Program-made: the position numbers and the translations under genes
The notes under the pieces: model-generated
What the model was told of the DNA's origin: nothing
Seen by the model: only the letters and a program-made list of their open reading frames with translations
Database searches by the model: none
Part shown: positions 3,001-22,071 of the stretch, one piece after another
Layout: every line of letters starts with the position of its first letter
How positions within the stretch are numbered: position 1 is the stretch's first letter
Source: Fimbriosthenelais zetlandica
Taxonomy: Eukaryota
Direction: 5' to 3'
DNA: 64,000 nucleotides
Assembly: GCA_977030845.1 (NCBI GenBank)
Contig: OZ365112.1
Span: 23,312,001-23,376,000 of the forward strand

Positions 3001-5737
3001 CAATGATCCCTATCGAACAGAATCAGAAAAGCTTCAAGAATAATAGTGGCATGTGTCGGGGTCGACATGAGCAGTTCAAAAAGGGCCTACTGTACTCTGA
3101 GCCGATATGAGCAGGTCGTTAAATTATGGACTGAAAGCGTTGTTTGGGTTAGTGGAGTTTCGCTTAGGAAGCAGACCCCCATTTGTTTATGTATACATTT
3201 GTCTAATTGGTTTATGTGTGATGGGCGCGAAGGGCAAAGACAATAGGCATAAGGTGGAAGGGTAATGAGCAGTTCATAACCGTTCTAATGACCTGTGAGC
3301 AGATGTGAGCATATCATGACCTAGTAGTCAGAAGGCAATGATCCCTATCGAACAGTATCAGAAAAGCTTCAGGAATAATATTGGCATGTGTTCGTGTCGA
3401 CATGAGCAGTTCAAAAAGGGTCTACTGTACTCTGAGCAGATATGAGCAGGTCGTTAAATTATGGACTGAAAGCATTGATTGGTTTAGTGGAGTTTCTGTT
3501 AGGAAGCAGACCCTCATTTGTGCATGTATACATTTGTCTAATTGGTTTATGTGTAATGGGCGCGAAGGGCAAAGACAATAGACATAAGGTGGAAGGGTAA
3601 TGAGCAGTTCATAACCATTTTAATGACCTCTGAGCAGATGTGAGCATATCATGACCCAGTTGTCACAAGCCAATGACCCATATCGGACATAATCAGAAAA
3701 GCTTCATGAATAATAGTGGCATGTGTCGGGGTCGTCATGAGCAGTTCAAAAAGGGTCTACTGTACTCTGAGCAGATATGAGCAGGTCGTTAAATTATGGG
3801 CTGAAAGCACAGGTTGGGTTAGTGGAGTTTCGGTTAGGAAGGAGACCCCCATTTGTGCATGTATACATTTGTCTAATTGGTTTATGTGTAATGGGCGCGA
3901 AGGGCAAAGACAATAGACATAAGGTGGAAGGGTAATGAGCAGTTCATAACCATTTTAATGACCTCTGAGCAGATGTGAGCATATCATGACCCAGTTGTCA
4001 GAAGCCAATGACCCATATCGGACATAATCAGAAAAGCTTCATGAATAATAGTGGCATGTGTCGGGGTCGTCATGAGCAGTTCAAAAAGGGTCTACTGTAC
4101 TCTGAGCAGATATGAGCAGGTCGTTAAATTATGGACTGAAAGCACAGGTTGGGTTAGTGGAGTTTCGCTTAGGAAGCAGACCCCCATTTGTGCATGTATA
4201 CATTTGTCTAATTGGTTTATGTGTAATGGGCGCGAAGGGCAAAGACAATAGACATAAGGTGGAAGGGTAATGAGCAGTTCATAACCATTTTAATGACCTC
4301 TGAGCAGATGTGAGCATATCATGACCCAGTTGTCAGAAGCCAATGACCCATATCGGACATAATCAGAAAAGCTTCATGAATAATAGTGGCATGTGTCGGG
4401 GTCGTCATGAGCAGTTCAAAAAGGGTCTACTGTACTCTGAGCAGATATGAGCAGGTCGTTAAATTATGGACTGAAAGCACAGGTTGGGTTAGTGGAGTTT
4501 CGCTTAGGAAGCAGACCCCCATTTGTGCATGTATACATTTGTCTAATTGGTTTATGTGTAATGGGCGCGAAGGGCAAAGACAATAGACATAAGGTGGAAG
4601 GGTAATGAGCAGTTCATAACCATTTTAATGACCTCTGAGCAGATGTGACCATATCATGACCCAGTTGTCAGAAGCCAATGACCCATATCGGACATAATCA
4701 GAAAAGCTTCATGAATAATAGTGGCATGTGTCGGGGTCGTCATGAGCAGTTCAAAAAGGGTCTACTGTACTCTGAGCAGATATGAGCAGGTCGTTAAATT
4801 ATGGACTGAATGCACAGGTTGGGTTAGTGGAGTTTCGCTTAGGAAGCAGACCCCCATTTGTGCATGTATACATTTGTCTAATTGGTTTATGTGTAATGGG
4901 CGCGAAGAGCAAAGACAATAGACATAAGATGGAAGGGTAATGAGCAGTTCATAACCGTTCTAATGACCTCTGAGCAGATGTGAGCATATCATGACCTAGT
5001 AGTCAGAAGGCAATGATCCCTATCGAAGAGAATCAGAAAAGCTTCAAGAATAATAGTGGCATGTGTCGGGGTCGACATGAGCAGTTCAAAAAGGGCCTAT
5101 TGTACTCTGAGCAGATATGAGCAGGTCGTTAAATTATGGTCTGAAAGCATTGATTTGGTTAGTGGAGTTTCGGTTAGGAAGGAGACCCCCATTTGTGCAT
5201 GTATACATTTGTCTAATTGGTTTATGTGTAATGGGCGCGAAGGGCAAAGACAATAGACATAAGGTGGAAGGGTAATGAGCAGTTCATAACCATTTTAATG
5301 ACCTCTGAGCAGATGTGAGCATATCATGACCCAGTTGTCAGAAGCCAATGACCCATATCGGACATAATCAGAAAAGCTTCATGAATAATAGTGGCATGTG
5401 TCGGGGTCGTCATGAGCAGTTCAAAAAGGGTCTACTGTACTCTGAGCAGATATGAGCAGGTCGTTAAATTATGGACTGAAAGCACAGGTTGGGTTAGTGG
5501 AGTTTCGCTTAGGAAGCAGACCCCCATTTGTGCATGTATACATTTGTCTAATTGGTTTGTGTGTGATGGGCGCGAAGGGCAAAGACAATAGACATAAGGT
5601 GGAAGGGTAATGAGCAGTTCATAACCGTTCTAATGACCTCTGAGCAGATGTGAGCATATCATGACCTAGTAGTCAGAAGGCAATGATCCCTATCGAACAG
5701 AATCAGAAAAGCTTCAAGAATAATAGTGGCATGTGTC
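1..5737. repeat. 335-bp satellite DNA array, about 17 units, continuing beyond the left edge of the window
   Basis: Near-identical units recur at an exact 335-bp period (31, 366, 701 ... 5391, 5726). Each unit contains two internal subrepeats of the form ATGAGCAGTTCA-N19-CTCTGAGCAGATRTGAGCA. Confidence 0.99.
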
Positions 5738-5738
5738 G
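5730..5738 (+). other. Left target-site duplication, CATGTGTC (8 bp; 9 bp if G5738 is counted)
   Basis: Identical to 21946-21954. An 8-11 bp TSD is characteristic of Mutator elements. Confidence 0.9.
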
Positions 5739-5890
5739 ATTGCATGACAACTCACCCCCCGGCAACTCACCCCCTTCTCCATCTCATACCCGCCCATCTC
5801 ACCCCCATGCCAACTCATCCCCCGCTCACTCATCCCCTGGTCAACTCACCCCCCTACGCATTCCCCACCCCTTCCAACTCACCCCACTAC
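5738..5890 (+). repeat. Left modular terminal inverted repeat
   Basis: Begins GATTGCATGACAACTCACCCC and contains about 8 copies of a CA(A/T)CTCAYCCC motif. It mirrors the reverse complement of 21787-21945. Confidence 0.85.
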
Positions 5891-8055
5891 GGTAGGGCCG
5901 TGCAACTGCTACCGAAGTGACACGGGTGAATGCGGTAGGTACTCACGGCTCCTTCCCATCTAAGTATGGGAAGTATCTTTTGAGTAAGCATATAATAAAA
6001 TACACATAAAGAATCTGAAAAACAAATGAATAATAATATGTTTTCACCAATCTTTTAAACCATGTTGTCATATTGAGCATCATACTTTGATTTAATTTTT
6101 CTTTTTAACTTTCCTCGTTGAACTATTGAGTATTCTTTCTATTCTCATTGTCTGAACTGCGGGTGATTTTAAGATTAATGATGAGTAGACGAGGATAGGA
6201 GGAAGTGGTGAGTGGTGAGGCTATAGGTGAGAGAATAAAAGGATGCGCACGCTGGATTGGCGCTCTCTTTGAATGCGGGTAGAGACAATGTGGACGTGTC
6301 CTTTATCTTATCCAAGATACTTCATGCTCTATATGCCTCCATCATGACAGAATCGACCAAGACATGCAGAATTGCGGTGCCTTGCCTGATATTAATTGGA
6401 TACAAATTATATAAAAATTATAATGCCATAGGCCGATAAATAATACAGGTGTGGTGTTCGTACTAATGATCGAGTGCATGGCACGTTTAGGTGGATGGAC
6501 CGACTCTTTCAGGCCATTTAATAGGCCTATAATTAAAATAAGGAACTTTGGTTTCATACCACTTCAGCCCAGCGATAAATTCAGCCACTAAAGTTAATGT
6601 GATACTTGATGATGAGAAATTAGAATTAATGATGAAAAATTGTTAAATTCATGTTGTAAATTAGTCACGAAAAAGATGCGTCGAACAATAAACTTTTGGT
6701 TAAAAAGTATTAATGACGAATATGTGGAGTAATAGGATTGATTTGGTACATTATAAGGTAAATTACAGGATAAATCGGACCTAACCTTTTGATATGCAAT
6801 AATTGAACATATATACGATTGAGTCTATTTAAGGCAAACTATACATTATTGCTGCTTCTAATACAAAAAGAAATCATGACCAGCACTCCCGTCCCTCCCT
6901 GGCTTGCATCCCTTTATATGATACCTGTCAATCACCCCAAGATACACCGAGAGAATGGTCAAAATTTTTGTCTCCCATTATAATATAGCTTCCCTATAAC
7001 TATGCAATTAAAACTATACTGTTAAAAATTGTCAAGAATTCTGCATTTTTCCCAATCTAGTCAAGTTCTATAGACTAAGATAGTTATATTATTAAAAAAT
7101 AGCATACGGTACTTATGACATAACAAATTAAAGCGAACAATATCAAGTTCCATGTGGTATTTTGTATGTATTTTTTATTCAAATGCACAACACCTACACA
7201 GTATAAAAACATAAAACATAAAAACAGTATGCAATGTATAAATTCAATATAATATCTCAGTCACCGATATTAAATAAAATTATATGCATAACAATCTGCC
7301 CAGAAATACCCCATGGCAGCAGCCAGAAATATGTGATGCAACACAAATCCAAATTTAATTCAATATAAACAATCCCACACAGAATCACCCCATCAAAATA
7401 GGCTCTGATATATCACAGTCAATTGAATACATCCCAATCTTCAATGATTTAATCCATAGCAAGTTTCCAGATATCCTTAACAGGAGGAAAGTTAAATAAT
7501 ATATCACTGTTAATCCTGTTAATGTAATTGAATATACTCTCATCTACAACGAATGTACATTGTATGCATAGAAATTGTACTGATATGCATAACAGCGTGT
7601 TGTATAATAATTTATAACAGCCGTATTAATTGTAAATGAAAATACCATCTATCAAGTTGTTTTGACAGCGAATTATTTTATACATTCAGCTTATAAATAT
7701 GTTAAAACTATAAACTATCAGCCAGTAGTCACCTGTGCGTGACCACTGTTGTGGTTACATAAATATAAATCAATGAACACACTGGAGTATAACATATTAT
7801 CCTCCTCTTTTTAAGAAATTCTTCTCTCGAAGAAACAAAACATAATTAAAAGGTTGTTACCATATTAATACCTGAATTATCCAATTACAAAAACAATACC
7901 CTGTTAACATTTCATAACTGGTTATCTTACAAAGTATTGCGAATTAAAAATAACATAATTATACCGGTAATACAGATACATGATTATACCTAAATACCGA
8001 GGAAATGACATAAAGTATTTGAAATAAAAAAATACAAACGACAGGGCAAGGGCAA

Positions 8056-8554
8056 GAATTTGACTTCAATCAAAATGATGAACTACAAAATACAAAGCCA
8101 TGTCCCAGGCCGGGCAAAGTATCGGCACTTCCCACACATGCACCTGAGACATGAAGAATTGAACTTCAATCAAAATGATGAACTACAAAATACAAAGCCA
8201 TGTCCCAGGCCGGGCAAAGTATCAGCACTTCCCACACATGCACCTGAGACATGAAGAATTGAACTTCAATCAAAATGATGAACTACAAAATACAAAGCCA
8301 TGCCCCAGGCCGGGCAAAGTATCAGCACTTCCCACACATGCACCTGAGACATGAAGAATTGAACTTCAATCAAAATGATGAACTACAAAATACAAAGCCA
8401 TGCCCCAGGCCGGGCAAAGTATCAGCACTTCCCACACATGCACCTGAGACATGAAGAATTGAACTTCAATCAAAATGATGAACTACAAAATACAAAGCCA
8501 TGCCCCAGGCCGGGCAAAGTATCAGCACTTCCCACACATGCACCTGAGACATGA
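8056..8554. repeat. 100-bp tandem repeat, about 5 copies, just downstream of the transposase stop codon (putative 3' UTR)
   Basis: CAAAATGATG occurs at 8071, 8171, 8271, 8371 and 8471. The copies are nearly identical. Confidence 0.97.
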
Positions 8555-8581
8555 AAATAACAACAGGAATAAAGTGACCGA

Positions 8582-9889
8582 CTATATCACAGGTCCATAG
8601 ACTTTGCTGACAGCCTTGAGTACCTGGTAGGGAGTCTTCTCCTTTGTCAGGTACTGGTTCCAGATAGAGCTGATGACACCTTGGCATGTTTTGAACCGTT
8701 TTCTCTGGTGCCTGCGAAGCTGATCTTCACTCACAAGTACCATCTGTAGGGATACATATGTGGCCTCACTGTGAAGAAGATTGATCAGCTTGTAAACACC
8801 AAGAGTGCCGTTGTTAGCACGGCCATTCATGCGCTTGTGCCAACCTTCCGTGTCGTTGTTGGTCCGGATAGCTTTCTTGAAAACAGTCCAAGAGTCAGGA
8901 GGCCAGAAGCTGCTCTCTACCCAGGTGTTCCTCACATACGATAGAAGACGTTGGAGCAACTCGTCAGTCGGATCTACCCTCTGGCAGAGGTTATCAAAGG
9001 CGTCCGGAATGTCTGCTGCCATGAGGAACGGGAGTGCCAGGAGATGTCGAACAAACTTGTGGACTGCATCATCCTTGGTATAGTGAGACTGCAGTCCTAC
9101 TTTTGCGACATATCTCCATACACTCTGCGTCCAATGGAACACACATCCTGACACCTTGACACCAATGAAGACCTGTCGGATAGCCGACCAACAAGCTGCT
9201 TCAAAGTCTGCCACAATCTCTCGCAGTCGGAGGGATTGAGGGAGAGTATCCTTGACAGACTGGAGAACATGGACGTAGTCCTCCTTCCTTCGGCTGCTCA
9301 TGAAAACAAAGACCAATGGTACCTGCTTTATAGAGTCATCAGACTCTAAGAAGCCATGAATGGACCAAAGCTGCACAAAGGGACGGGCAATAATCTTAAA
9401 GGTGCCATCAACATACCACACAGGACACTTACGGAGGAGCTGCAACTGGGTGGTTGAAGCAAACACCATGTGTCTGCTCTCTCCCACCCATAGGTCCTTA
9501 ATCAGGAAGTTCTCAGGTATGTGGTCGGTGATGGTCTCAAAGTTTATGTCCGTCGGCTCTTTGGGCAGAAGCACCTGACGAGCTCTCTGAGCAGTTCTAA
9601 GCAGGTTTGATGGATTGACTCTGCTGCCAGATGGTTCGCTGCCTGTACCCATATACTTTATCATTTGCTCCTGGACAATCGCCTGAGCCGGTCGATTCAG
9701 GTTAGCCTTAGCCTCTTGCTTGATGGCAGTTTTGGTGTATATGGCATTGGCTAAGCCAGGTTTACCACAGTGGGTGTGGCCCACACTGCCTCGGATGTAC
9801 TCATCCCCCACTTGTGTCACTGCAGATCGACAGCGAACACCATCTTGCTGGAATGAGCACACCCACCTTGTGGTGTTGCTCGACTTTTT
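8582..9889 (-). CDS. Exon 3 of the transposase gene: C-terminal half of FLYWCH plus the MULE DDE catalytic domain
   Basis: Acceptor TATTTTCAG, then KKSSNTTRWVCSFQQDGVRCRSAV...GHTH (FLYWCH W-x-C...C...H-x-H). Catalytic motifs WYVDGTFK, VADFE, GCVFHWTQ (CxxH) and NNDTEGWH are present. The frame is open to the stop at 8582. Confidence 0.95.
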   Translation of the reverse strand, partial: KKSSNTTRWVCSFQQDGVRCRSAVTQVGDEYIRGSVGHTHCGKPGLANAIYTKTAIKQEAKANLNRPAQAIVQEQMIKYMGTGSEPSGSRVNPSNLLRTAQRARQVLLPKEPTDINFETITDHIPENFLIKDLWVGESRHMVFASTTQLQLLRKCPVWYVDGTFKIIARPFVQLWSIHGFLESDDSIKQVPLVFVFMSSRRKEDYVHVLQSVKDTLPQSLRLREIVADFEAACWSAIRQVFIGVKVSGCVFHWTQSVWRYVAKVGLQSHYTKDDAVHKFVRHLLALPFLMAADIPDAFDNLCQRVDPTDELLQRLLSYVRNTWVESSFWPPDSWTVFKKAIRTNNDTEGWHKRMNGRANNGTLGVYKLINLLHSEATYVSLQMVLVSEDQLRRHQRKRFKTCQGVISSIWNQYLTKEKTPYQVLKAVSKVYGPVI

Positions 9890-10119
9890 CTGAAAATAGA
9901 GAAATATGAAATATTAATAATATTATACAAGACAGATTTGGTGAGCTGCATTCAGTTATTAAAGCAACCCTATATAACTATACCCCCAGAGGTATGGAGA
10001 AATCTTTATTATCTCAACTTGCAGATAGAAAGTATTGAATAAAGTATGTACAGTCGCAGTAGAACTTAAATAACATTATGTGCTTCTAGACACACTTTAT
10101 AACAACATAACTTATTGAC

Positions 10120-12469
10120 ATAGGAGTGTCCCATGTTGTCTACGAGAAGGTTCCCTCCTCTCTGTGTCCCTCCCACGACAATCGTGAAGGTCAGGGATAG
10201 CTGGCTGGCATCATGGTTGTTTGTGTTAATGGGTGCGTCTGGTGATGTGTTGTTGTTTCTTGCTATTGTTGAGGTAGATGTGGCTGGCAGTGAAACATCA
10301 TCCTGGAGTGTAATGTCTATGTGATGTCTATTGGTAGGTGGTGGTCTGAGTGGGGGTGGAGATGGAGATGGTGCGGCTCTTCTGTTTTGGCGCCGAGCAC
10401 GGGAGGTGGGTGGGGGTGGAGATGGTGATTGTGGAGAGGGTGGAGATTGTAGTGGGGGAGATGGAGATGGCGCGGCTCTTCTTGTTTGAGCACGGGAGGT
10501 GGGTGGGGGTGGAGATGGTGATTGTGGTGAGGATGGAGATTGTAGTGGGGGAGATGGAGATGGCGCGGCTCTTCGGTTTTGGCGCCGAGCACGGGAGGTG
10601 GGTGGGGGTGGAGATGGTGATTGTGGTGAGGATGGAGATTGTAGTGGGGGAGATGGAGATGGCGCGGCTCTTCGGTTTTGGCGCCGGGCACGGGAGGTGG
10701 GTGGGGGTGGAGATGGTGATTGTGGTGAGGATGGAGATTGTAGTGGGGGAGATGGAGATGGCGCGGCTCTTCGGTTTTGGCGCCGGGCACGGGAGGTGGG
10801 TGGGGGTGGAGATGAAGATGGCGCGGCTCTTCGGTTTTGGCGCCGAGCACGGGAGGTGGGTGGGGGTGGAGATGGTGATTGTGGTGAGGATGGAGATTGT
10901 AGTGGGGGAGATGGAGATGGCGCGGCTCTTCGGTTTTGGCGCCGGGCACGGGAGGTGGGTGGGGGTGGAGATGGTGATTGTGGTGAGGATGGAGATTGTA
11001 GTGGGGGAGATGGAGATGGCGCGGCTCTTCGGTTTTGGCGCCGGGCACGGGAGGTGGGTGGGGGTGGAGATGAAGATGGCGCGGCTCTTCGGTTTTGGCG
11101 CCGAGCACGGGAGGTGGGTGGGGGTGGAGATGGTGATTGTGGTGAGGATGGAGATTGTAGTGGGGGAGATGGAGATGGCGCGGCTCTTCGGTTTTGGCGC
11201 CGGGCACGGGAGGTGGGTGGGGGTGGAGATGGTGATTGTGGTGAGGATGGAGATTGTAGTGGGGGAGATGGAGATGGCGCGGCTCTTCGGTTTTGGCGCC
11301 GGGCACGGGAGGTGGGTGGGGGTGGAGATGAAGATGGCGCGGCTCTTCGGTTTTGGCGCCGAGCACGGGAGGTGGGTGGGGGTGGAGATGGTGATTGTGG
11401 TGAGGATGGAGATTGTAGTGGGGGAGATGGAGATGGCGCGGCTCTTCGGTTTTGGCGCCGGGCACGGGAGGTGGGTGGGGGTGGAGATGGTGATTGTGGT
11501 GAGGATGGAGATTGTAGTGGGGGAGATGGAGATGGCGCGGCTCTTCGGTTTTGGCGCCGGGCACGGGAGGTGGGTGGGGGTGGAGATGAAGATGGCGCGG
11601 CTCTTCGGTTTTGGCGCCGAGCACGGGAGGTGGGTGGGGGTGGAGATGGTGATTGTGGTGAGGATGGAGATTGTAGTGGGGGAGATGGAGATGGCGCGGC
11701 TCTTCGGTTTTGGCGCCGGGCACGGGAGGTGGGTGGGGGTGGAGATGGAGATTGTGGTGAGGATGGAGATTGTAGTGGGGGAGATGGAGATGGCGCGGCT
11801 CTTCGGTTTTGGCGCCGGGCACGGGAGGTGGGTGGGGGTGGAGATGGAGATGGTGCGGCTCTTTTGTTTTGAAGCCGGGCACGGGAGGTGGGTGGGGGTG
11901 GAGATGGAGATGGTGCGGCTCTTTTGTTTTGAAGCCGGGCACGGGAGGTGGGTGGGGGTGGAGATGGAGATGGTGCGGCTCTTTTGTTTTGAAGCCGGGC
12001 ACGGGAGGTGGGTGGGGGTGGAGATGGAGATGGTGCGGCTCTTTTGTTTTGAAGCCGGGCACGGGAGGTGGGTGGGGGTGGAGATGGAGATGGTGCGGCT
12101 CTTTTGTTTTGAAGCCGGGCACGGGAGGTGGGTGGGGGTGGAGATGAAGATGGCGCGGCTCTTTTGTTTTGAAGCCGGGCACGGGAGGTGGGTGGGGGTG
12201 GAGATGGAGATGGTGCGGCTCTTTTGTTTTGAAGCCGGGCACGGGAGGTGGGTGGGGGTGGAGATGAAGATGGCGCGGCTCTTTTGTTTTGAAGCCGGGC
12301 ACGGGAGGTGGGTGGGGGTGGAGATGGAGATGGTGCGGCTCTTCTGTTTTGAAGCCGGGCACAGGAGGTGGGTGGGGGTGGAGATGAAGATGGCGCGGCT
12401 CTTCTTGCTTGTCGGTTTTGACGCCGAGCACGGGAGTTAGGCGGTAGTGGAGATATGACAGTTGTCTCC
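10120..12469 (-). CDS. Exon 2 of the transposase gene: Ser/Pro/Arg repeat linker plus the N-terminal half of FLYWCH (frame not shown in the ORF track)
   Basis: Acceptor TTTCTTTACAG|G GAG ACA. The frame reads ETTVISPLPPNSRARRQNRQARRAAPSSSPPPPTS... without stops to ...LTFTIVVGGTQRGGNLLVDNMGHSY, a typical FLYWCH start. The 3' donor position (GTCAAT at 10119) is the least certain boundary. Confidence 0.82.
10350..12420. repeat. Coding minisatellite of 60-bp and 99-bp units with a 258-bp higher-order period
   Basis: About ten 60-bp units (RAAPSPSPPPPTSRARLQNK) are followed by 99/99/60 blocks. The marker GATGAAGATGG recurs at 10811, 11069, 11327 and 11585. Confidence 0.97.
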
Positions 12470-14135
12470 CTGTAAAGAAAATGGGAAAATTAATTTGTGT
12501 TGACAGAATTGATATGTACAATAATATTTTTATTCGCATTCACGGTTTGAAGATGCGTTACTGCTAATCAAAAAGTACATGTCTGAAAGGGTTAACTTAA
12601 TAAGGTAATATCAACATTTCATGGAACACTAACTCAATCCATTTATTTATTACTGATAGACAGGCTTATTTCAATATAGAACCTGACGCAAAATAAAGAA
12701 AGGGTGCAGACAGGACTCCTTCATCTAGATAACAGGATTTAAAGATGGTGTTACATCCAATATCTAGTACCGTTTGAAAGTCAGTAATTGTACTGTAACC
12801 TTTAGAATAATGGTTGCTACTATTTGAGGGCTTATTTCTAATAATTTTTAATTTGGAAAATAGATAAAACAACATGAGTATTTAACAAATGTGAAGGTGA
12901 AAGAGATACTTCAAGTGAGATGCAAGTGTTATATCGAAGAACATTGTACCAGATTAAAGATAGATGCACATTTTTAGTACTACTTGCACATAGTTAGAGT
13001 GTAATTATTGAGGACTAACTAACTTAAGTAGATTCAGAATTTTCCAACGAGAATCCCAGATATTTACAGAATTCTTATTTTTCTTTGAGTAATTATTTCT
13101 AGCCATTGACGAAAATCTGCCAACCATTCAATGAAAGAACACTCTCTATATATCATGGATCAGTCTTCTCTTCATTCTATAAAATTTGATATGGATAAAC
13201 AGAGCACTTGTAAATCTAGTATTTTCACAATTAGTCAGTGAAGGTACAACGTATAGGGATCCTAACATTACGGGATGAAACAATAGTTAAGGATGCTATA
13301 ATCATTGTTTTTTCGGCGCGAATCCTAACTGAGAAATCAGAAGGCTATTTACTATGGTCACTTTAACCTTGAGTGAAAGATTTCTGGTTCCCCCACCTTT
13401 AATATTATCTTACTCATAAACGGGGTGGTCAGTTCCGATTGGGCATCTAGAGAATTGGACCCGCCTTGTACCCCCTCATTGGCTTCTGACTACCTCGGTC
13501 CCCACCATTCTATGAACAGTCCTTGTGGTCTGACCAACGCTACTTGTTATACATTCAGCCAGATCGATTAAAGCTACATATTAAAACTACATATTTTATA
13601 CATTCTTGAAACATACTGTTATCAAAATTTACTGTATATAAATTTTTCAACACACAACCCCCCAGAACCTATCACATGCATTCAATGAACCCCTTTCCAC
13701 CCCAAGGAGCTGACATACAGTACATTAGGTCTCATATTTTGTGAAGATGGATCGCTTCCCTGATATTATACACCCAATATATGCAAACGTACGCTCAGTC
13801 ATATGACTATTTAGGAGCTCTCGTGTTTTCACACTCCCTGTATAGTTCACAATTTATCCTATACCAAATCAGCTGTCATATAGATCGATCTTCAATACTA
13901 TAGTATATAATATATATACCTCCCTTTCAAGTTCTAATAATGTAGTCAAACATAGCCTTAAAAATAACCAACTTATTTGGAACCTTACAGACACCCTTCC
14001 GCATAAAAGTGCCCTAATAACGCCAGTGAAAATGTATACTATAAGCTTTGCACCCAGGATTTTCACCGAAGACAAACCAAAGTTAAGGCTAAAATAATTC
14101 TGCTACAAGAGCACAAAATATTTGAATAGACCGAG

Positions 14136-14469
14136 TTTATCCATGCACATCAATCCATGAAATTGAATCGAAAAAAGAAATAAAACAACATCTTAAACAA
14201 AAACCAAAACTCTTGGAGAAACTTTCAATTCCAGGTTCTGAATGTTAGCTTAATCCAAATATTATCCACATCACTTAAGGCTAATTAAATGACTATATAA
14301 CCGTAAACATGAAAGCACTGTAAAAGCATTATAAACCCTGTGATCTTTGTGAATACCAACTCAAAGTTAAATATAACTATCCATCGCCCCCAACGGGTGC
14401 TCTCTTACCATAAACTCCTTATATTGACTAATGAATTTAAAGATTGCATATTGTGCCATTAGCTTGCTA
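14136..14469 (+). repeat. Intronic direct repeat, copy 1 (~335 bp; partner at 15703-16038)
   Basis: TTTATCCATGCACATCAATCCATGAAATTG...GTGCCATTAGCTTG is nearly identical in both copies. A short upstream block is also shared (14037-14062 vs 15667-15692). Confidence 0.95.
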
Positions 14470-14533
14470 ATGTCGCACCTCATTCCAAATCCATTTGGTT
14501 GTTGAGGCTCCCACCTCCATGGTCTCTACTCCG

Positions 14534-15056
14534 CCACCCCGAGGAGGCAGCCTCGGGGTGGGAGGGAGGAAGCAATCTGGCAGTTCTGCCTTTTTCATAA
14601 TACTTCCAAACCATTTTTAATATCTAAAAACACTATAAATGACCTCAAACATAGAATATATCAATATAACACATAGCAAACAATACCAATTTCAAATACC
14701 AAACAATATCCAGACCAATATACCTCTGTCACAGAGCATGTAGAAAGTTGAGGGCAATCCCCTCGTCATTTCCAACAGTGAATAAATATCTGTTTTAGCC
14801 CATAATCATTCATTTTAATATACTTTGAGATTTCTTTTGATAGCCTCGTAATGAAAAACTTACATGTGAGGACAGAAGTATATACTATAAACATTCTACC
14901 ACACACACTCATTACTGTAATAATATTAATCTACCCTCTGCTTATACTGTACTCCACCGACTTCCAGACGTCTATTTCTCAGTATATCCAACCTCTAAAA
15001 CCCGTCTAACATTACATGTCTAATTCCCAACATGTCAGATACCTATCTCTACCACT
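14534..15056 (+). repeat. Dispersed repeat segment in intron 1, homologous in inverted orientation to 45008-45862
   Basis: Shared blocks include ATATCTAAAAACACTATAAATGAC, ACATGTGAGGACAGAAGTATAT and CCTCTAAAACCCGTCTAACATTACATGTCTAAT. Confidence 0.92.
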
Positions 15057-15702
15057 TTTATATATAATTTATATTTATATACTCTTCACTACAATATATA
15101 TATGAACAAATACTATCTGATTAAGCAAAGTTGAAAATGTATGTAATGTATGATAAAATACTGTTCCATGCCCGTAACACCATCACTTTATTATAAATCC
15201 TTTACCAATATAGACTGAGCCCCCCCCCCCCCCAAACCCTACCCCCTTCCAATCCTTCTCCTTAAAGTCTGAGGTATACGAACATATCTGTTAAAGTGAG
15301 AACCACTGATCCAATAAATGAAAATACTATTTACCTTATTAATGCACACAATACAGTGTACCATTACACGAAAGTGATTGGATACCTGTATCAGGATAAA
15401 TCCATCTTAATCACTCCACACATTTAAAATTGGACAGTAAAAACACTTTAACAAATAGGTCATTTTGATAAAACAGAATTATTTTATGTTAACTATGGTA
15501 ACTTGTTTTCAATTAATTTTCATTTATTTACACTAGTTTTGAACTTGACTATTATACATGTAAACCTGGATGCCCATGGAAACCAGGCTTTATGCCTAAT
15601 GAATTCAGGAGGGGGGGGATGACTAAAATGTATCCTAACTACAGCCCCGATGGTAAGGTGCCCTAATACTATAAGCTTTGCGCCCAGGATTTTTTGTGCA
15701 TT

Positions 15703-16038
15703 TTTATCCATGCACATCAATCCATGAAATTGAATCGAAAAAAGAAATAAAACAACATATTAAACAAAGACCAAAACTCTTGGAGAAACTTTCAATTCCA
15801 GGTTCTGAATGTTAGCTTAATCCAAATATTATCCACATCACTTAAGGCTAATCAAATGACTATATAACCGTAAACATGAAAGCACTGTAAAAGCATTATA
15901 AACCCTGTGATCTTTGTGAATACCAACTCAAAGTTAAATATAACTATCCATCGCCCCCAACGGGTGCTCTCTTACCATAAACTCCTTATATTGACTATTG
16001 AATTTAAAGATTGCATATATATGGTGCCATTAGCTTGT
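15703..16038 (+). repeat. Intronic direct repeat, copy 2
   Basis: Near-identical to 14136-14469. Confidence 0.95.
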
Positions 16039-16574
16039 TAACACATGGCTGACACATGGGCGCAGCTTTGACATTCTATGATCATTAGTTACAACCAAAC
16101 CCAATTTTTCAAGTGGAAATATACTGACTGCATTATAATTTACCTATTCAGGTTATTGTTTTTCATATGCTATAGATATTTATCTACCTTTATGGATCGA
16201 ATGTTATACAGATATTCTAGCTCAATACAAATCAGCTTTTTGATTCAGGGGATTGTGCATCGTAAGAGAAGTGGAAATTCTCGCGCATTATCCCTTTTGG
16301 GAGGGCTGTAACATTGTCTATGATAAGGATATTTCAATTCAGCCTTTTGTATTGGACTCCGTGATTTTTCTACTTCTCATTTTTGCATTTAAAATAAATA
16401 GGAGTTTTCCCTATATTCAAAGTTCGCCTAAAACCCCTAACACAGGAGGTTTCAAAACGGAAACACATCTTTACAGGACCAACATTTACAAACTATCAGG
16501 TTCCCAGCAGAAAGTAAGATATGAGCAGAAAGTAGAATGACGGATTAATTCTAATGATAAGTAAAATAACTTAC

Positions 16575-17227
16575 ATTGCTTCTGAACTTCTGAGAGTAGT
16601 TTCTCTGTTGGAATTGTCAGGCTCAGGCTCTATGGTCGACTCCATATCTGCTATTGTATCCTCAATAAAGGTCAGCCGTCGGGCACCCTGGAGGCCAGCT
16701 CCCCGGCGACTCCTTGACTTTGTTCCGTTCTTTGTTCCACGCCCATAACGATTTGGGGTGGAGGTTTTTGGTGGTGTGGAGGTTTGGTTTACAGATCCAT
16801 CATCCTGGGACATATCCATTGATGCATAAGAATGTGAACTGTCCATGGATTGTTTCAGAAAACACGTACCACATTTCCAGAACCATGTTTCCCGCATGCG
16901 TTCGATCTCTGAATAATCAGTGTCCTTAAAGTCTGAACCGCACCTGAGATGGGTGAAGATGTGACACGAAGAGCATTCGATCCATTTGTGTGTATCCAAA
17001 TTCAAACCTTTCTTACAAACGGAACAAACCTGTTGGTCACTTCCGATATCACAGTTATCACATATCCATGTATTGAGTTCTCCAGCAACTAGAAGCGCAG
17101 AGAACTTTCTACGGGAAAAAGATGTCCCACACGTTCTGTGGTAGAACCTTGGACAGGTTGAGCATTGAAGATTCAGCTGTGACTTGCATGATATGTTTTT
17201 GTCGCATCCGTAACACCTGACCTTCAT
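16575..17227 (-). CDS. Exon 1 of the transposase gene: two tandem PHD (C4HC3) zinc fingers plus a basic/serine-rich segment
   Basis: ATG at 17227. Finger 1: CYGC...CSTC...HRTC...WICDNC. Finger 2: CSVC...CSSC...HLRC...WKCGTC. The exon ends GCA AT|GTAAGT, a consensus phase-2 donor that matches the phase of the 12469 acceptor. Confidence 0.88.
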
Positions 17228-17239
17228 CTTGGTTCGTAC

Positions 17240-17470
17240 AGTAGTGACGGTGGCTTAACCGCAGATAATACTTTTTATAGCTGGAATGGTGTCACTGTCG
17301 CACCTCATTCCGAATCCAAATGGTTGTTGAGGCTCCCACCTCCATGGTCTCTACTCATCTCCCCCACCCCTCCTGCCACACCCTCGCACCCATGCAACCC
17401 ATATCCAAACTCCGCCCACCCCCAGCCCGGTTTCTCCCGCTTCCGCTCTTCCCTCTTCCCGGTATAGAGA
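17240..17470 (-). promoter_or_regulatory. Putative promoter of the PHD-transposase gene
   Basis: On the minus strand: TATAAAAAG at 17279-17271, an Inr-like TCACT about 30 nt downstream, ATG 45 nt after the TATA, and an upstream GC-rich segment with GGGCGG and CGGAAG motifs. Confidence 0.55.
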
Positions 17471-19885
17471 GTAGGCCTATGTGGGGATTATTGGGAAAAC
17501 AGGGAGATATATTACACAAATCTGGAGAACAGGAAAGAGAACATATTGCACTACGTTTTTCAAAATGTTGGAGTTTGGAATGTTATAATTATCTTTTTGA
17601 GGGTGCAGTATTTTATTAAAATTTATGGAAGGGTAATCGGGGGCAATGCCTCGTGGGGGTCTTTACCCATGCTAGGTAAATATGAATGACCATATTAATT
17701 AATTATGACCAAGTAAAATCCCGTGATCAATATTTTAGAGCTTTGCATTTTAATTAAAATGTCTTCGTTATATTTCGTTATATTTAAAAACGCCCACATA
17801 TAATGCATAATTATAATGCCTTATATTGCATGCGATTGGGGAAATCTGAAGGGGAGGGGCCAGACAGCGAGGGTCACTGACTAACTCACTCATTATACGT
17901 CTGATGTAGTTGTAGGCCTAAACAACTCAAGGGCTCGAACTGTATTACCATAAGCAACGCATCTATATCACCAGTAACGAATGACAATTAGTATATTGTC
18001 GTCACCTTTCATAAAATGTCGTAAGTTTATAAGGGTGTGTGTCTTTGAGTGACCACTTCTAACTCAGCTATAAACATGGTATCAATTAGCACTTTCGCTT
18101 GATGCCCAACCACTTACCTAACACTTCCCTTTCATACGCCCTTATGGCATACCGAATCAAATATCAAGGCAAGATTAATATCGATGTCAATGAGTTTTAT
18201 CATCAATTCACAAGGCATAGGCTTTGACAATGTTGAGAAAAGTTATCAGTTATGCTAAAAGTACATGCAGTATTAGTAGACTAGAATTTTTCTTTTGTAT
18301 TCCTTTACATTTTTTTCTGATGAAAAAACATTGTATGTAACAGTATTCCCTCATGTTGTTATTGTTTTATTTTCATCATAATTACTGTTTTATTATAATG
18401 ATATTAAATATATAAAGAAAATATGGTATATTTAAAGACAGGGATTCATAATCATTTACTTTATAATGGCCTCTGCATGTATATGCCTGCATGCATGTAA
18501 TTGGTATCTTGAATGTGAATTCCCCCCCTCGCCCCCTCTCAGCTTCGATGGGGTGGGTGGGGCGGGGGCGATGGTCACAGCAACGAGCTAGGCATACTCC
18601 TTGGGTTACAGTAAAGCGTGCAGGAGGCGCACGCGGAGTGCCAGGCTGGGTCCTGGCCGGGTGGGGGCGCTGGGCGGTAGGGGTACCAGGAGGAGGAAGG
18701 TAAATAGGATACATGAGAAGGGCAATGATAGGGACAGAAGCGGACAATTAATTAACACCAGTCCCACACATTACTTCTTAGGTCATCACACGTGGCCATC
18801 GATAGGAGCCATTTAGTATTATCTTGACCCCTCATATAATGTTATTTGATGTGCTCCTGGCATAGCCAAGGGTGGTCATTTTCACACCCGCCAGTGAACA
18901 TGGGATCAATAAGCCTAAACCTTATCTCTTCGCTTTTATAAGTACAGTAGACTTGACACAAGTTCTATGAATATCGTATGAGATTTTTATAATACCAACA
19001 TTAATGTTAGGTACTATGGTAGAAATTTTAAAATCGTTATTTTATCAAAGATTGGATTTTCGGCCAAATTACACAAAGCGATTTCAACTGAGTGAATAAC
19101 TTTATCCATTCAAAAGTTATCGGAGATTGACCGGCCAAAAAATTGCCATTTTTTCTCGCTTCTTTACTATAGGCCAGCGGAGGATATTTATTGGGATTGT
19201 CACATCACCTGCATTGATCGAATTTGCCATGTGACCGGAAACAAGAAATCAATTCTCCTGCGCCTTAAAGGATTGCTGCTAAATTATAATTTTAATAACG
19301 GCTCTTTCATCTACACATCTTAAGTAACATATAGGTTTTAATAACTAAAATTAATGTTTCGGTTTGGGGTTTTCTCACATAGCGCAGCGGCCGGTCACTT
19401 TCTGGGTAATGCCATACCTTATTAGCCTAAAAAGACTGCATGTTCTAATACAAATAGAAATTACTTATTGTTGGGCAAAAATGTCTGAAAAAGCCGCCTT
19501 GATCATCATCAGTCTGTAATTCTGCCTCTTGAGAAATGAGAAGGTTCAACGGAACATCGGGCCTATTTAGTAGATTGGAATTGCCAGGCTGATCACTTGC
19601 CAAATATAACAGCGAAAAATGGGACGAGTTTGATGATACTTAGAAGGTTAGAAGAGAATAATATAATATTTTGATATAAAATCAAGATATGATATTTGTT
19701 TGAGAAATAATTATTTTTACTCCTACTTCCCATATTGGTTCTTATATTGTTTTTTTTTTAATTTTCTTCTGAGGCGACACCATGTATTGGCAGACTTGCC
19801 TTTTTTGCTATTAACTTTGGCACATGAATGGAATGAAATTCTAACCCACGAAATATGTTAGGCTACATTGGGCATCATGACAATT

Positions 19886-19995
19886 CAGGGTTTCCAAACT
19901 CATGGAGAATCCCTGAAATCCTTAGAAAAAGAGTTGCCCTGGAATGTCCTGGAAAAGTCCTTAAATTTTGTCATTATTGCAAAAATTCTGGAAAT
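19886..19995 (+). mobile_element. Fragment resembling the end of a small non-autonomous DNA transposon (MITE)
   Basis: CAGGGTTTCC start followed by repeated (G/T)CCTGGAA/CCTTGAA-type subterminal motifs. No partner end was found. Confidence 0.35.
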
Positions 19996-20272
19996 TAGGA
20001 CTAAACAGTCATTTTTCTTACAACACACTGCATTAATATCCAGAGGGCCGAGTGTTTTCTATAAGAAATTACGTCCGGACATTATTTTGTTACTTGAAAG
20101 AAGGACAGTTTATAGTCCCTATATGGATATTGCTATGCTACAAATTAGGACTAAATTTATATTAGTTGTCAAAGATTAAAACAAAAATCAATTCTAAAAA
20201 AAAAATGTCCCTTGGCAACGGAATAATTTTAAGGGAATAAGAGCAAAATTTGTCATTTTAGGTACTTATATT

Positions 20273-20341
20273 TAACCTAACCCTAAACCTCAACCTAACC
20301 TAATCCCTAAAATATAGACCTAACCCTAACCTAATCCCTAA
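20273..20341. repeat. Degenerate (A)ACCTA/CCCTAA low-complexity repeat
   Basis: TAACCTAACCCTAAACCTCAACCTAACCTAATCCCT...CCTAACCCTAACCTAATCCCTA, followed by a YY1-like GCCGCCATCTTG. Confidence 0.6.
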
Positions 20342-20517
20342 AGACATCAACCTGCGAGACTTGGCCGCCATCTTGGATCAGGCCCCTAAAGTGCAGTTAA
20401 GCCTAAATTCATATTTTTAATATTTTTTTTTATCCCGCCCGCCCCCGAATAATTTAGAACCATTTTGTCCGTGAACCAAACAATAAAAATGTCTGGCCTA
20501 ATTAGATAAATGTAACA

Positions 20518-20590
20518 GCGCACGGCGAGAAGCGAACCACCGACCTTTGCATTTCAGACACGACACTCTAACCGTCTGAGCCACCACGAC
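20518..20590 (-). mobile_element. tRNA-derived SINE head or degenerate tRNA-like sequence
   Basis: The minus strand reads GTCGTGG-TGGCTCAGACGGTTAGAGT...AGGTCGGTGGTTCGCTTCTCGCC, with A-box and B-box spacing. The acceptor stem does not pair, so it is not a functional tRNA. Confidence 0.65.
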
Positions 20591-21264: not shown

Positions 21265-21271
21265 GTCGACT

Positions 21272-21786: not shown

Positions 21787-21945
21787 CCCCTGGGGGTATG
21801 AGTTGGTTAGGGGGATGAGCTAGCCGGGGTGTGGGATGGTCGTGGGGGCGAGTTTACCAGGGGTGTGAGTTGGAGGGGGGATGACCTAGTGAAGGGAGGA
21901 GATGGGTGGGGGATGAGATGACGGGGTATGAGTTGTCGTGATACC
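21787..21945 (-). repeat. Right modular terminal inverted repeat
   Basis: The reverse complement begins GGTATCACGACAACTCATACCCC and has about 8 CA(A/T)CTCAYCCC-like motifs, mirroring the left end. Confidence 0.85.
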
Positions 21946-22066
21946 CATGTGTCGGGGTCGACATGAGCAGTTCAAAAAGGGCCTATTGTACTCTGAGAAG
22001 ATATGAGCAGGTCGTTAATTTGTGATCTGAAACAGTGGTTGTTTTTTTGGAGTTTTGGTTTTGAAG
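21946..22066 (+). repeat. Right TSD plus the remainder of the interrupted 335-bp satellite unit, degenerating towards its 3' end
   Basis: CATGTGTCGGGGTCGACATGAGCAGTTCAAAAAGGGCCTATTGTACTCTGAG... continues the unit broken at 5737. Confidence 0.95.
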
Positions 22067-22071
22067 TTCTA

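What the first reader, a model, noticed from the sequence alone, without database searches (positions are those of the whole stretch)
8582..17227. Hidden three-exon gene fusing tandem PHD fingers, a giant repeat linker, FLYWCH and an intact MULE DDE transposase (~1,436 aa)
Seen: the PHD ORF ends on a perfect GTAAGT donor in phase 2 (16574). The repeat exon starts at a TTTACAG acceptor needing phase 2 (12469), giving AT|G-GAG = Met-Glu. That frame, absent from the ORF track, stays open for 2.35 kb and ends in the first half of a FLYWCH domain whose second half begins exon 3. Exon lengths 653+2350+1308 = 4311 nt form one reading frame with D, D, CxxH and E intact. Known: PHD fingers are histone-tail readers, and FLYWCH-MULE transposases occur in animals, some with a PHD finger. 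Inference: a double PHD on a ~690-aa flexible tether could let the transposase read chromatin state and choose its target. Both fingers have Phe, not the Trp of ING/BPTF-type H3K4me3 readers, two residues before the zinc-binding His, so they may prefer unmethylated H3K4 or another mark.
Basis: partly seen in the sequence, partly recalled or inferred. Interest (0 to 1): 0.88.

Follow-up and report, generated by a model that had tools for sequence, protein, structure and literature searches.

The report
Split PHD-FLYWCH Mutator transposase gene
This is the transposase gene of a complete 16-kb Mutator-type jumping gene in an animal genome. Its chromatin-reader-like PHD start, DNA-binding FLYWCH finger and cutting domain match the usual layout of its relatives, but here they are split by introns and probably stretched by a huge in-frame repeat.

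Summary
The three minus-strand pieces (17227-16575, 12469-10120, 9889-8582) add to 4311 nt and give one 1436-aa frame with a single, terminal stop. Pfam finds PHD in piece 1 and MULE plus the second half of FLYWCH in piece 3.

The gene sits inside a complete Mutator-like element (5739-21945). The element has a 9-bp target duplication, and empty-site copies survive in the flanking satellite.

The fusion is not special to this locus. At least 16 of the 150 best family representatives start with a homologous Pygo-type PHD finger, followed by a disordered and often repetitive Ser/Pro linker, then FLYWCH and MULE. Those whose contigs I fetched carry all of this in one uninterrupted ORF. Start, stop and catalytic residues here match the family.

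Particular to this copy:
- a duplicated PHD finger
- Phe instead of the family's Trp in both fingers
- two introns
- a roughly 2.1-kb minisatellite inside the linker

No transcript data could be obtained. Two splice choices stay open:
- An in-phase acceptor at 10345 would skip the whole repeat and give 728 aa, a typical family length.
- A stronger donor at 10096 would add 8 residues.

I put one spliced gene at about 0.85 and translation of the repeat at about 0.6. Chromatin-guided targeting is untested. Two earlier scan notes cover this same stretch.

The parts
5730..5738 (.). Left copy of the 9-bp target-site duplication CATGTGTCG
   Evidence: Aligning both junctions with two uninterrupted satellite units shows one CATGTGTCG in the empty sites and one on each side of the element.
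5739..5900 (+). Left terminal inverted repeat, an array of CAACTCACCCCC-like motifs
   Evidence: It aligns with the reverse complement of the right end (alignment mean column identity 75%), and blastn gives 68% over 149 nt. TRF finds 15/31-nt motif periods.
8054..8555 (.). Non-coding minisatellite, 100 bp x 5, just 3' of the transposase stop
   Evidence: TRF gives 99% matches. A period of 100 is not a multiple of 3.
8582..9889 (-). Exon 3: second half of FLYWCH, the MULE DDE domain and the stop codon (8584-8582)
   Evidence: Pfam MULE 5.8e-11. Full-length alignment to 13,074 relatives, best 42% identity. Invariant D/D/CxxH/E are present. The acceptor is TTTTCAG|A.
9890..10119 (-). Intron 2 (230 nt; 206 nt if donor 10096 is used), splitting the FLYWCH loop
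   Evidence: Read-through hits a stop. Only GT-AG pairs 10120/9889 or 10096/9889 keep the frame with the good acceptor. A Branchiostoma belcheri relative has an intron within about 2 codons of this place.
10120..10344 (-). Unique 3' part of exon 2: linker tail and first half of FLYWCH (LTFTIVVGGTQRGGNLLVDNMGHSY)
   Evidence: phmmer matches the FLYWCH N-halves of many relatives. Alignment is and the family HMM scores.
10345..12469 (-). Repeat part of exon 2: a minisatellite encoding about 27 Pro/Ser/Arg-rich units of 20 or 33 aa in the FLYWCH frame. It is skipped if acceptor 10345 is used.
   Evidence: TRF periods 60/99/159/258 nt at 93-98% identity. Units are listed. All length variants are multiples of 3. 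The strong acceptor lies at 12469 and an alternative in-phase acceptor at 10345.
12470..16574 (-). Intron 1 (4.1 kb), holding nested repeats
   Evidence: The donor GTAAGT is at 16574. 14136-14470 matches 15703-16041 (97%). 13647-15055 matches another repeat copy at 45009-46121. No ORF of 70 aa or more lies inside.
16575..17227 (-). Exon 1: start codon, PHD1 (Cys5-Cys59), PHD2 (Cys68-Cys121) and a basic/acidic linker
   Evidence: Pfam PHD. Homology to the N-terminal PHD of relatives, E down to 3e-11. AF2 model with Pygo-like fold.
17273..17279 (-). TATAAAA, 52 nt upstream of the ATG; a candidate core promoter (inferred)
   Evidence: Read directly. Function is not tested.
21790..21945 (-). Right terminal inverted repeat (motif array)
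21946..21954 (.). Right copy of the 9-bp target-site duplication CATGTGTCG

Best explanation
The locus is the transposase gene of a complete, probably autonomous, 16.2-kb Mutator-like element of the FLYWCH-bearing (Phantom-like) kind. The element inserted into the last unit of a 335-bp satellite array.

Shown:
- The element has a 9-bp target duplication and long imperfect motif-array terminal repeats.
- Its only substantial coding capacity is the PHD ORF, the repeat and the FLYWCH-MULE ORF, all on one strand.
- Many relatives encode an N-terminal Pygo-type PHD, a disordered and often repetitive Ser/Pro linker, FLYWCH and the MULE DDE domain, in a single ORF wherever I checked the contig.

Inferred:
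- Transcription starts just downstream of a TATA box.
- Exon 1 (two PHD fingers, the second an internal duplicate) splices from AT|GTAAGT to the acceptor at 12469.
- A 2.35-kb exon carries an in-frame minisatellite expansion of the family's disordered linker and the first half of FLYWCH.
- A short intron in the FLYWCH loop is then removed, from donor 10120 or 10096.

Inferred mechanism: FLYWCH binds the motif arrays in the element's ends, and the DDE domain cuts and joins. The PHD fingers tether the enzyme to a histone tail or another nuclear partner, and the repeat acts as a long flexible spacer that is tolerated rather than required.

My estimates: PHD and transposase are one gene, about 0.85. 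The repeat is translated in the main isoform, about 0.6.
For: Element boundaries and the 9-bp duplication, with empty-site paralogues. No other ORF of 70 aa or more inside the element lies clear of the repeat and the exons, apart from short ones at 17.3-20.9 kb and 6342-6557 that were not examined.

Frame and splice signals:
- GTAAGT occurs only 4 times on this strand of the element, and one copy overlaps the PHD ORF's stop.
- Strong acceptor-like sites occur about once per 1.3 kb. One lies in phase 21 nt after the last in-frame stop, at the edge of the repeat.

Family architecture:
- 16 of the top 150 representatives carry a homologous N-terminal PHD (phmmer E down to 3e-11).
- Pfam finds PHD+FLYWCH+MULE in P0005, P0011, P0016, P0106 and P0124.
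- P0005, P0110 and P0011 are single uninterrupted ORFs on L002-L006.
- PHD-bearing members are scattered across the family tree.

The first Cys at residue 5 and the C-terminus match relatives. Catalytic residues are intact. The FLYWCH halves join to 72-75 bits.

For a translated repeat:
- Unit lengths of 60, 99 and 93 nt are all multiples of 3.
- There is no in-frame Met between the repeat and FLYWCH.
- Relatives carry in-frame tandem repeats at the same place in their single ORFs: 15/30-nt in L006 and 51-nt x3 in L005.
Against: No RNA or DNA run was listed, so no junction is observed.

Against a translated repeat:
- It is also open in a second minus-strand frame.
- Codon usage does not favour the proposed frame: -0.26 bits per codon against -0.11 and +0.04 for the other two.
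- Variants among units show no excess of silent changes: 6 silent to 6 replacement in the proposed frame.
- The in-phase acceptor at 10345, with a C-rich tract, would give 728 aa and a linker of family-typical length.

Other points:
- Donor 2 as proposed (GTCAAT) is poor. 10096 (GTGTGT) scores better both on a donor matrix I recalled from memory and on the family HMM.
- A hypothetical uninterrupted join scores best of all (83 bits), so intron 2 may be a recent insertion.
- No second copy of the element or close relative (above 42% identity) was available to test conservation.
- A 2.35-kb internal exon is unusually long.
Confidence: 0.62

Rival explanations
1. Same gene, but the minisatellite is intronic. 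Exon 1 splices to the in-phase acceptor at 10345 at the far end of the repeat, giving a 728-aa PHD-PHD-linker-FLYWCH-MULE protein of ordinary family size. The repeat would be a non-coding minisatellite like the one after the stop codon.
For: - Acceptor 10345 (CTCCATCTCCACCCCCACTCAG|A) has 17 of 20 pyrimidines and is in phase and open to 10120.
- The product is 728 aa with a linker of about 150 aa, as in relatives of 600-730 aa.
- Codon usage and variant patterns give no coding signal in the repeat.
- Non-coding minisatellites are a known feature of Phantom and Rehavkus elements (PMC6446971), and one lies at 8054-8555.
Against: - The first strong acceptor after the donor is the T-rich one at 12469, placed exactly where the frame opens.
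- About four independent length variants in the repeat are all multiples of 3, roughly 1-4% by chance.
- The AG at 10345 lies inside a degenerate terminal repeat unit.
- Relatives do translate tandem repeats at this place.
Confidence: 0.22
2. The copy is no longer a working gene. An ancestral uninterrupted ORF was broken by insertions (the 4.1-kb and 222-230-nt stretches), and the splice-like signals are fortuitous or inefficient. At most a 218-aa PHD-only protein would then be made.
For: - The relatives whose contigs I fetched (L002-L006) have intronless ORFs.
- Intron 1 contains nested repeats and a duplicated 61-bp piece of the promoter region.
- The hypothetical uninterrupted FLYWCH join scores best, at 83 bits.
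- Donor 2 is weak.
- The PHD ORF has its own stop.
Against: - All three coding stretches are free of stops and frameshifts across 2.2 kb of unique sequence, with every invariant residue kept.
- A perfect GTAAGT lies at the ORF end, and a classical acceptor in the right phase lies where the frame opens. I estimate joint chance at about 1e-4.
- A Branchiostoma belcheri relative has six canonical short introns, one of them in the FLYWCH loop.
- The target duplication is intact.
- No free-standing PHD protein of this kind was found among proteins of 120-380 aa.
Confidence: 0.12
3. The PHD ORF is a separate accessory gene of the element, like the second ORF of some Mutator elements, and the transposase is expressed on its own.
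For: - The ORF has its own ATG, TATA box and stop.
- Some MULE groups carry two ORFs (PMC6446971, Table 1).
Against: - The FLYWCH frame has no in-frame Met upstream of the domain.
- In relatives the homologous PHD is the N-terminus of the transposase itself.
- No stand-alone homologue was found.
Confidence: 0.04

Closest known systems
Phantom-type (FLYWCH-bearing) Mutator-like elements of animals (Marquez and Pritham 2010, as summarised in PMC6446971)
   Same: - A MULE DDE domain with a FLYWCH zinc finger upstream of it
- A target duplication of 8-10 bp (9 bp here)
- Long terminal repeats
- A minisatellite after the transposase ORF (8054-8555 here)
   Different: - An N-terminal Pygo-type PHD finger is not listed for this group in the papers I could read, and here it is duplicated.
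- The gene is split by two introns.
- The element is 16.2 kb.
- A second minisatellite lies inside the reading frame.

I could not open the original Phantom paper, and I made no alignment to a named Phantom sequence.
Uncharacterised PHD-FLYWCH-MULE proteins in public collections (P0005, P0011, P0016, P0023, P0124; Branchiostoma belcheri KAI8508520.1 = P0106)
   Same: - The same domain order, with homologous PHD (about 25-36% identity) and transposase (37-43% identity)
- A disordered Ser/Pro-rich linker, sometimes with in-frame tandem repeats
- The same start and end points
   Different: - They have one PHD finger with Trp before the His, and linkers of 80-290 aa.
- Those whose contigs I fetched are intronless and sit on contigs of 2.2-4.6 kb.
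- This copy has two fingers with Phe, a linker of up to about 850 aa, and introns.
Pygopus PHD finger (hPygo1, PDB 2vp7/2vpe; fly Pygo, 3zpv)
   Same: - It is the best solved-structure match by sequence (E 0.014).
- It is the best single-finger match by fold (TM 0.77, rmsd 1.8 A).
- Relatives hit Pfam PHD_Pygo.
- It shares the HR.C.TG...Y...W.C..C signature.
- Fly Pygo also has Phe at the pocket-divider position (PMC3851687).
   Different: - Pygo is a Wnt co-activator with a C-terminal PHD that works with BCL9 HD1. No such partner is known here.
- Several Pygo histone-contact residues are not kept. For example Glu360 aligns with Ser, by my own reading of the alignment.
- Histone binding is untested.
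Rehavkus elements (Repbase; described in PMC6446971)
   Same: - A Mutator-related transposase carrying a PHD finger
- A 9-bp target duplication
- Long terminal repeats
- A minisatellite near the 3' end
   Different: - PMC6446971 places the Rehavkus PHD in the transposase domain, not at the N-terminus, and lists no FLYWCH for the group.
- No Rehavkus sequence was available for comparison, so kinship is untested.
RAG2 PHD finger with the RAG1 (Transib-derived) recombinase
   Same: By analogy only, and from my general knowledge: a PHD finger that couples a DDE cut-and-paste enzyme to a histone mark.
   Different: - The transposase superfamily is different.
- The PHD sits on a separate subunit.
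- RAG2 reads H3K4me3 with a Trp-containing cage.

Membership tests
Mutator-like element (MULE) superfamily | Transposase matches the MULE DDE domain above the curated cut-off | tested here: met
   PF10551 at 43.1 bits against a cut-off of 27.6, E 5.8e-11. 13,074 relatives at E<=1e-3.
Mutator-like element (MULE) superfamily | Catalytic D, D, E and the CxxH motif are present | tested here: met
   D1162, D1229, C1250/H1253 and E1349 fall on invariant or >=90% conserved columns of a 24-sequence alignment.
Mutator-like element (MULE) superfamily | Target-site duplication of about 9 bp (8-11) | tested here: met
   CATGTGTCG on both sides, present once in each of two empty satellite units.
Mutator-like element (MULE) superfamily | Terminal inverted repeats | tested here: met
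   About 150-200 bp, built of CAACTCACCCCC-like motifs and imperfect: 68% identity over 149 nt by blastn, alignment mean column identity 75%.
Mutator-like element (MULE) superfamily | Transposition activity | not testable with these tools
   No second copy, no population data and no assay.
Phantom-like FLYWCH MULEs | A complete FLYWCH (WRKY-GCM1 type) finger N-terminal to the DDE domain | tested here: met
   Met only after splicing. The C-half alone gives Pfam E 0.011, below the cut-off. The joined halves score 72.0 bits (donor 10120) or 74.9 bits (donor 10096) against an HMM of 55 relatives. W, C, C, H are invariant.
Phantom-like FLYWCH MULEs | Groups with named Phantom transposases in a tree | not tested
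PHD finger, Pygo type | C4HC3 zinc-ligand spacing | tested here: met
   Both fingers: Cys5...Cys59 and Cys68...Cys121. They align without gaps to each other and to the family finger.
PHD finger, Pygo type | Pfam PHD above the cut-off, and a PHD fold | tested here: met
   PF00628 at 25.4 bits against a cut-off of 24. AF2 model at pLDDT 78, with finger 1 at 83-92 and finger 2 at 58-75. Foldseek matches Pygo PHDs at TM 0.72-0.78 and rmsd 1.8-2.3 A.
PHD finger, Pygo type | Trp two residues before the zinc-binding His, the K4me pocket wall (W366 of hPygo1) | tested here: not met
   Phe28 and Phe90 here. 14 of 16 aligned relatives have Trp. The role of W366 is from PMC2726290, and the natural W>F change in fly Pygo from PMC3851687.
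PHD finger, Pygo type | Binds a histone H3 tail | not testable with these tools
   Needs peptide binding assays.
Double PHD finger (DPF) module of MOZ/DPF2/DPF3 | Two fingers packed as one rigid unit | tested here: inconclusive
   Foldseek E is about 7e-4, but TM is 0.32-0.35 and rmsd 12-14 A over both fingers. The model's inter-finger geometry has low confidence (pTM 0.49).
Rehavkus | PHD finger within or after the transposase domain, and a minisatellite before the 3' terminal repeat | tested here: not met
   The PHD is N-terminal here. The minisatellite after the ORF is present. The criterion is taken from PMC6446971, and no sequence comparison was possible.

The most novel reading that the evidence does not exclude
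A whole, largely undescribed lineage of animal Mutator transposases carries a Pygopus-type histone-reading PHD finger at its N-terminus and uses it to choose chromatin for insertion.

In this copy the finger is doubled and both copies have the fly-Pygo-like Trp-to-Phe change. That could shift preference from H3K4me towards marks of silent chromatin (H3R2me2a or unmethylated K4), which would fit its landing in a satellite array. The roughly 690-aa Pro/Ser/Arg repeat would act as a long tether or a multivalent interaction platform.

A further possibility is that the Pygopus PHD finger and this transposase finger share an origin.
Probability: 0.1. Interest if true: 0.75.

Novelty: new variant of a known kind. 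Interest (0 to 1): 0.45.

Why it matters
How DNA transposons pick their targets is known for few families. A cut-and-paste transposase with a built-in histone-reader-type domain is a direct, testable candidate for chromatin-guided insertion, as RAG2's PHD finger does for V(D)J recombination.

The comparison here shows the PHD-FLYWCH-MULE layout is widespread among animal and environmental sequences, so it is a family trait and not a curiosity of one locus. The papers I could reach do not describe it.

This copy adds a natural experiment: a doubled finger with a pocket-wall substitution, and a linker expanded about five-fold by a minisatellite. It is also a practical warning for annotation. ORF-based calls would report only the 426-aa C-terminal piece and a spurious 740-aa repeat ORF.

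Tried and rejected
- **Transcript evidence.** Two run searches, one on the whole locus and one on 8582-10340, listed nothing, so read laying could not be used.
- **Stand-alone PHD relatives.** A search for proteins of 120-380 aa found none.
- **Other copies in the window.** tblastn with the three pieces found only the locus itself.
- **Other copies in the genome.** Earlier scan notes on this genome named no other copy.
- **Close relatives.** The best hit among 1.84 billion representatives is 42% identical, so synonymous/non-synonymous tests or conserved-intron tests with close kin were impossible.
- **Coding signal inside the repeat.** Variant positions by codon phase and codon-usage log-likelihood were both uninformative or slightly against the proposed frame. 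The sequence is one short unit repeated, so power is low.
- **Alternative acceptors near FLYWCH.** Those at 10302 and 10283 are out of phase by my hand calculation, and they are absent from the in-phase list.
- **Alternative donors.** Donor 10112 (phase 2) pairs only with poor acceptors.
- **The 740-aa ATG ORF (10317-12539) and the long plus-strand ORFs in the repeat.** These are by-products of a stop-free repeat unit. The 740-aa ORF starts inside intron 1 and ends before FLYWCH.
- **LTR-like reading of the 339-bp direct repeats in intron 1.** There are no TG...CA ends and no target duplication.
- **The original Phantom paper.** It could not be opened.
Full report
**Observation**

Joined, they translate to 1436 residues with a single, terminal stop.

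The splice signals are as described:
- Exon 1 ends AT|GTAAGT, so the ORF's TAA lies inside the donor.
- Exon 2 begins after TTTTCCCATTTTCTTTACAG.
- Exon 3 begins after TTTCTCTATTTTCAG.
- The second donor, TAT|GTCAAT, is weak.

The frame that carries the first half of FLYWCH is closed by a TAA at 12492-12490, only 21 nt upstream of the proposed acceptor. From there it stays open to 10120.

Pfam finds PHD in exon 1 (1.5e-5, 25.4 bits against a cut-off of 24, two stretches). In exon 3 it finds MULE (5.8e-11) and FLYWCH profile positions 22-62.

**The repeat**

It is a minisatellite with periods of 60, 99, 159 and 258 nt and 93-98% identity between copies. In the proposed frame it encodes about 27 units of 20 or 33 residues of the type RAAPSPSPPPPTSRARRQNR. 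The composition is 31% Pro, 21% Ser and 17% Arg.

A second minus-strand frame is open over the repeat, which is the 740-aa ATG ORF at 10317-12539. Long ORFs also run on the plus strand.

**Context**

The gene lies inside a complete Mutator-like element. The window begins with at least 17 copies of a 335-bp satellite (1-5738). The element interrupts the last unit. The sequence CATGTGTCG occurs once in uninterrupted units and on both sides of the insertion, at 5730-5738 and 21946-21954. Only about 200 bp of satellite follow.

The ends are imperfect inverted arrays of CAACTCACCCCC-like motifs, 68% identical over 149 nt by blastn.

Within the 16.2 kb I saw no other convincing gene. The few remaining ORFs of 70 aa or more (17.3-20.9 kb and 6342-6557) are short and were not examined further. 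A second, clearly non-coding minisatellite (100 bp x 5) follows the stop codon. PMC6446971 lists that feature for Phantom and Rehavkus elements.

**Relatives**

An exhaustive profile search with exon 3 found 13,074 representatives at E<=1e-3. The best is 42% identical and aligns from the FLYWCH second half to the last residues. The collection therefore holds no near copy of this gene.

Of the 150 best representatives, 16 match exon 1 (phmmer full-sequence E 3e-11 to 4e-3). Each match lies at the protein's extreme N-terminus, with the first Cys at residues 2-19. Among 40 representatives with a Met start and at least 100 residues upstream of FLYWCH, 14 have the finger.

Pfam confirms PHD+FLYWCH+MULE in P0005, P0011, P0016, P0106 and P0124. 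The genes for P0005, P0110 and P0011 translate directly from contigs of 2.2-4.6 kb, so PHD, linker, FLYWCH and MULE form one uninterrupted ORF there.

On a tree of the transposase core, the PHD-bearing members are scattered (8 changes for 11 rows). That fits an ancestral finger that is often lost or missed by gene callers.

It also means the fusion is a family trait and not a discovery peculiar to this locus.

**How well this locus fits the family**

- The ATG at 17227 puts the first Cys at residue 5, as in relatives.
- The stop codon coincides with the family's C-terminus.
- W, C, C, H of FLYWCH and D1162, D1229, C1250xxH1253 and E1349 fall on invariant or near-invariant columns.
- The tail of exon 2 (LTFTIVVGGTQRGGNLLVDNMGHSY) aligns with the first half of relatives' FLYWCH.
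- Joined to exon 3, it scores 72.0 bits against an HMM of 55 relatives.

The FLYWCH frame has no in-frame Met upstream of the domain, so an upstream coding exon is required.

GTAAGT occurs four times on this strand of the element, and one copy overlaps the PHD ORF's stop. Strong acceptor-like sites occur about once per 1.3 kb, and one sits in the right phase in the 21-nt gap between the last stop and the repeat. My rough estimate of the joint chance is about 1e-4.

A TATAAAA lies 52 nt upstream of the ATG.

A Branchiostoma belcheri relative (KAI8508520.1) has six short canonical introns, one in the FLYWCH loop within about two codons of intron 2 here. Introns in this family are therefore real.

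**What remains open**

No sequencing run was listed for the locus, so no junction is observed.

*Is the repeat translated?*

For:
- The classical acceptor lies at its 5' edge.
- About four independent length variants (60 nt, +39, -6, and the longer first unit) are all multiples of 3. I estimate about 1-4% by chance.
- Relatives hold in-frame tandem repeats at the same place in their single ORFs: 15/30-nt Ser/Pro repeats in L006 and 51-nt x3 in L005.

Against:
- An in-phase acceptor at 10345, preceded by the C-rich end of the repeat, would skip the array. It would give a 728-aa protein with a linker of about 150 aa, which is exactly family-typical.
- Codon usage does not favour the proposed frame.
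- Unit variants show no excess of silent changes.

*Which donor ends exon 2?*
- AAA|GTGTGT at 10096 keeps the frame and adds VNKLCCYK.
- It scores better than GTCAAT on a donor matrix that I recalled from memory, and on the family HMM (74.9 bits).
- A hypothetical uninterrupted join (…YVNK+KK…) scores best, at 83.1 bits. This suggests intron 2 arose by insertion into a once continuous ORF.

Intron 1 holds nested repeats and a 61-bp duplicate of the promoter-proximal region, so it has grown by insertion and rearrangement.

**The fingers**

PHD1 and PHD2 align without gaps over 55 residues, and both match the family finger, PHD1 better. PHD2 is therefore a lineage-specific internal duplication.

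- The best solved-structure match by sequence is human Pygopus-1 PHD (2vp7, E 0.014).
- The AF2 model has pLDDT 78, with finger 1 at 83-92 and finger 2 at 58-75.
- One finger of the model superposes on Pygo PHDs at TM 0.72-0.78 and rmsd 1.8-2.3 A.
- Matches to double-PHD modules of MOZ/DPF2/DPF3 cover both fingers only at rmsd 12-14 A, so a rigid DPF-like unit is not supported.
- Relatives carry precomputed PHD_Pygo hits, and the Atlas feature search agrees.

The position two before the zinc-binding His is W366 of hPygo1. It is the wall between the K4me and A1 pockets and is essential for H3K4me binding (PMC2726290). Note that 2vp7 is itself the W366F mutant. In the alignment, 14 of 16 relatives have Trp there, while this protein has Phe in both fingers.

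Fly Pygo carries the same natural change. There it lowers histone affinity and borders a groove for H3R2me2a, a mark of silenced genes (PMC3851687). That is an analogy and not evidence.

**Mechanism**

Shown: a complete element with an intact, family-typical coding capacity.

Inferred:
- The three exons are spliced into one transposase.
- FLYWCH, a WRKY-GCM1-fold DNA binder (PMC1702500), recognises the motif arrays in the ends.
- The DDE domain performs cut-and-paste with a 9-bp staggered target cut.
- The PHD pair tethers the enzyme to a histone tail or another nuclear partner.
- The Pro/Ser/Arg repeat is a tolerated expansion of an intrinsically disordered spacer.

The single insertion seen here is in a satellite. 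That is compatible with a preference for silent chromatin, but it cannot test one.

**Comparison and novelty**

- FLYWCH-bearing MULEs (Phantom) are known, as are PHD-bearing Mutator relatives: Rehavkus, and a C-terminal PHD in some WRKY-type MULEs (PMC1702500, PMC6446971).
- An N-terminal Pygo-type PHD ahead of FLYWCH-MULE is common in sequence collections, but it is not described in the papers I could read. The original Phantom paper was not available.
- I therefore rate the locus a new variant of a known kind. Its own peculiarities are the doubled Phe-type finger, the introns, the 16-kb size and the in-frame minisatellite.
- Interest is moderate. The family-level reader-transposase link is the valuable part, and it needs bench work.

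Noticed in passing
window 1-5738 and 21955-22160: A 335-bp satellite with at least 17 copies at 95% identity runs to the window's left edge. The Mutator element sits in its last unit, and only about 200 bp of satellite follow it.
   Followed up: partly
window 8054-8555: A 100-bp x 5 minisatellite (99% matches) lies directly after the transposase stop. No AATAAA occurs on this strand until 7179, so the 3' UTR would be over 1 kb.
   Followed up: partly
window 14136-14470 and 15703-16041; 14471-14531 and 17296-17356: Intron 1 holds a 339-bp direct repeat pair (97%). Next to one copy is a 61-bp duplicate (95%) of the sequence just upstream of the TATA box of exon 1. This looks like a partial duplication of the 5' region with exon 1 deleted. 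No LTR-like ends were seen.
   Followed up: partly
window 13647-15055 and 45009-46121: An unrelated dispersed repeat (79-93% identity, opposite orientation) is nested in intron 1. A second copy lies elsewhere in the window.
   Followed up: no
L002-L004 (contigs encoding P0005): Compact relatives on contigs of 2.2-3.2 kb carry an intronless PHD-FLYWCH-MULE ORF. It starts about 240 nt after a 25-nt x 3 motif array and is followed by a 21-nt x 3 array. This mirrors, in miniature, the motif-array ends and post-ORF repeat seen here.
   Followed up: partly
P0060 (1885 aa): A relative with an N-terminal PHD finger and about nine successive matches to the FLYWCH first half before the transposase, that is, a FLYWCH array.
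   Followed up: no
P0008 (827 aa), N-terminal 390 residues: A relative whose N-terminal extension contains a DGNCFYHSLS motif. By eye this looks like an OTU-type cysteine protease box, and OTU fusions to MULEs are mentioned in PMC1702500 and PMC6446971. I did not check it with Pfam.
   Followed up: no
L001 6001-8299 (Branchiostoma belcheri, KAI8508520.1): This family member has six short canonical GT-AG introns (114-183 nt), one inside the PHD finger and one in the FLYWCH loop. Intron content clearly varies across the family.
   Followed up: partly
P0110 linker (L005 538-695): Its 51-nt x 3 repeat encodes ...TSRAPRRAAQPP... units, which resemble the TSRARRQNRRAAPS units here. This may be chance similarity between low-complexity sequences.
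   Followed up: no
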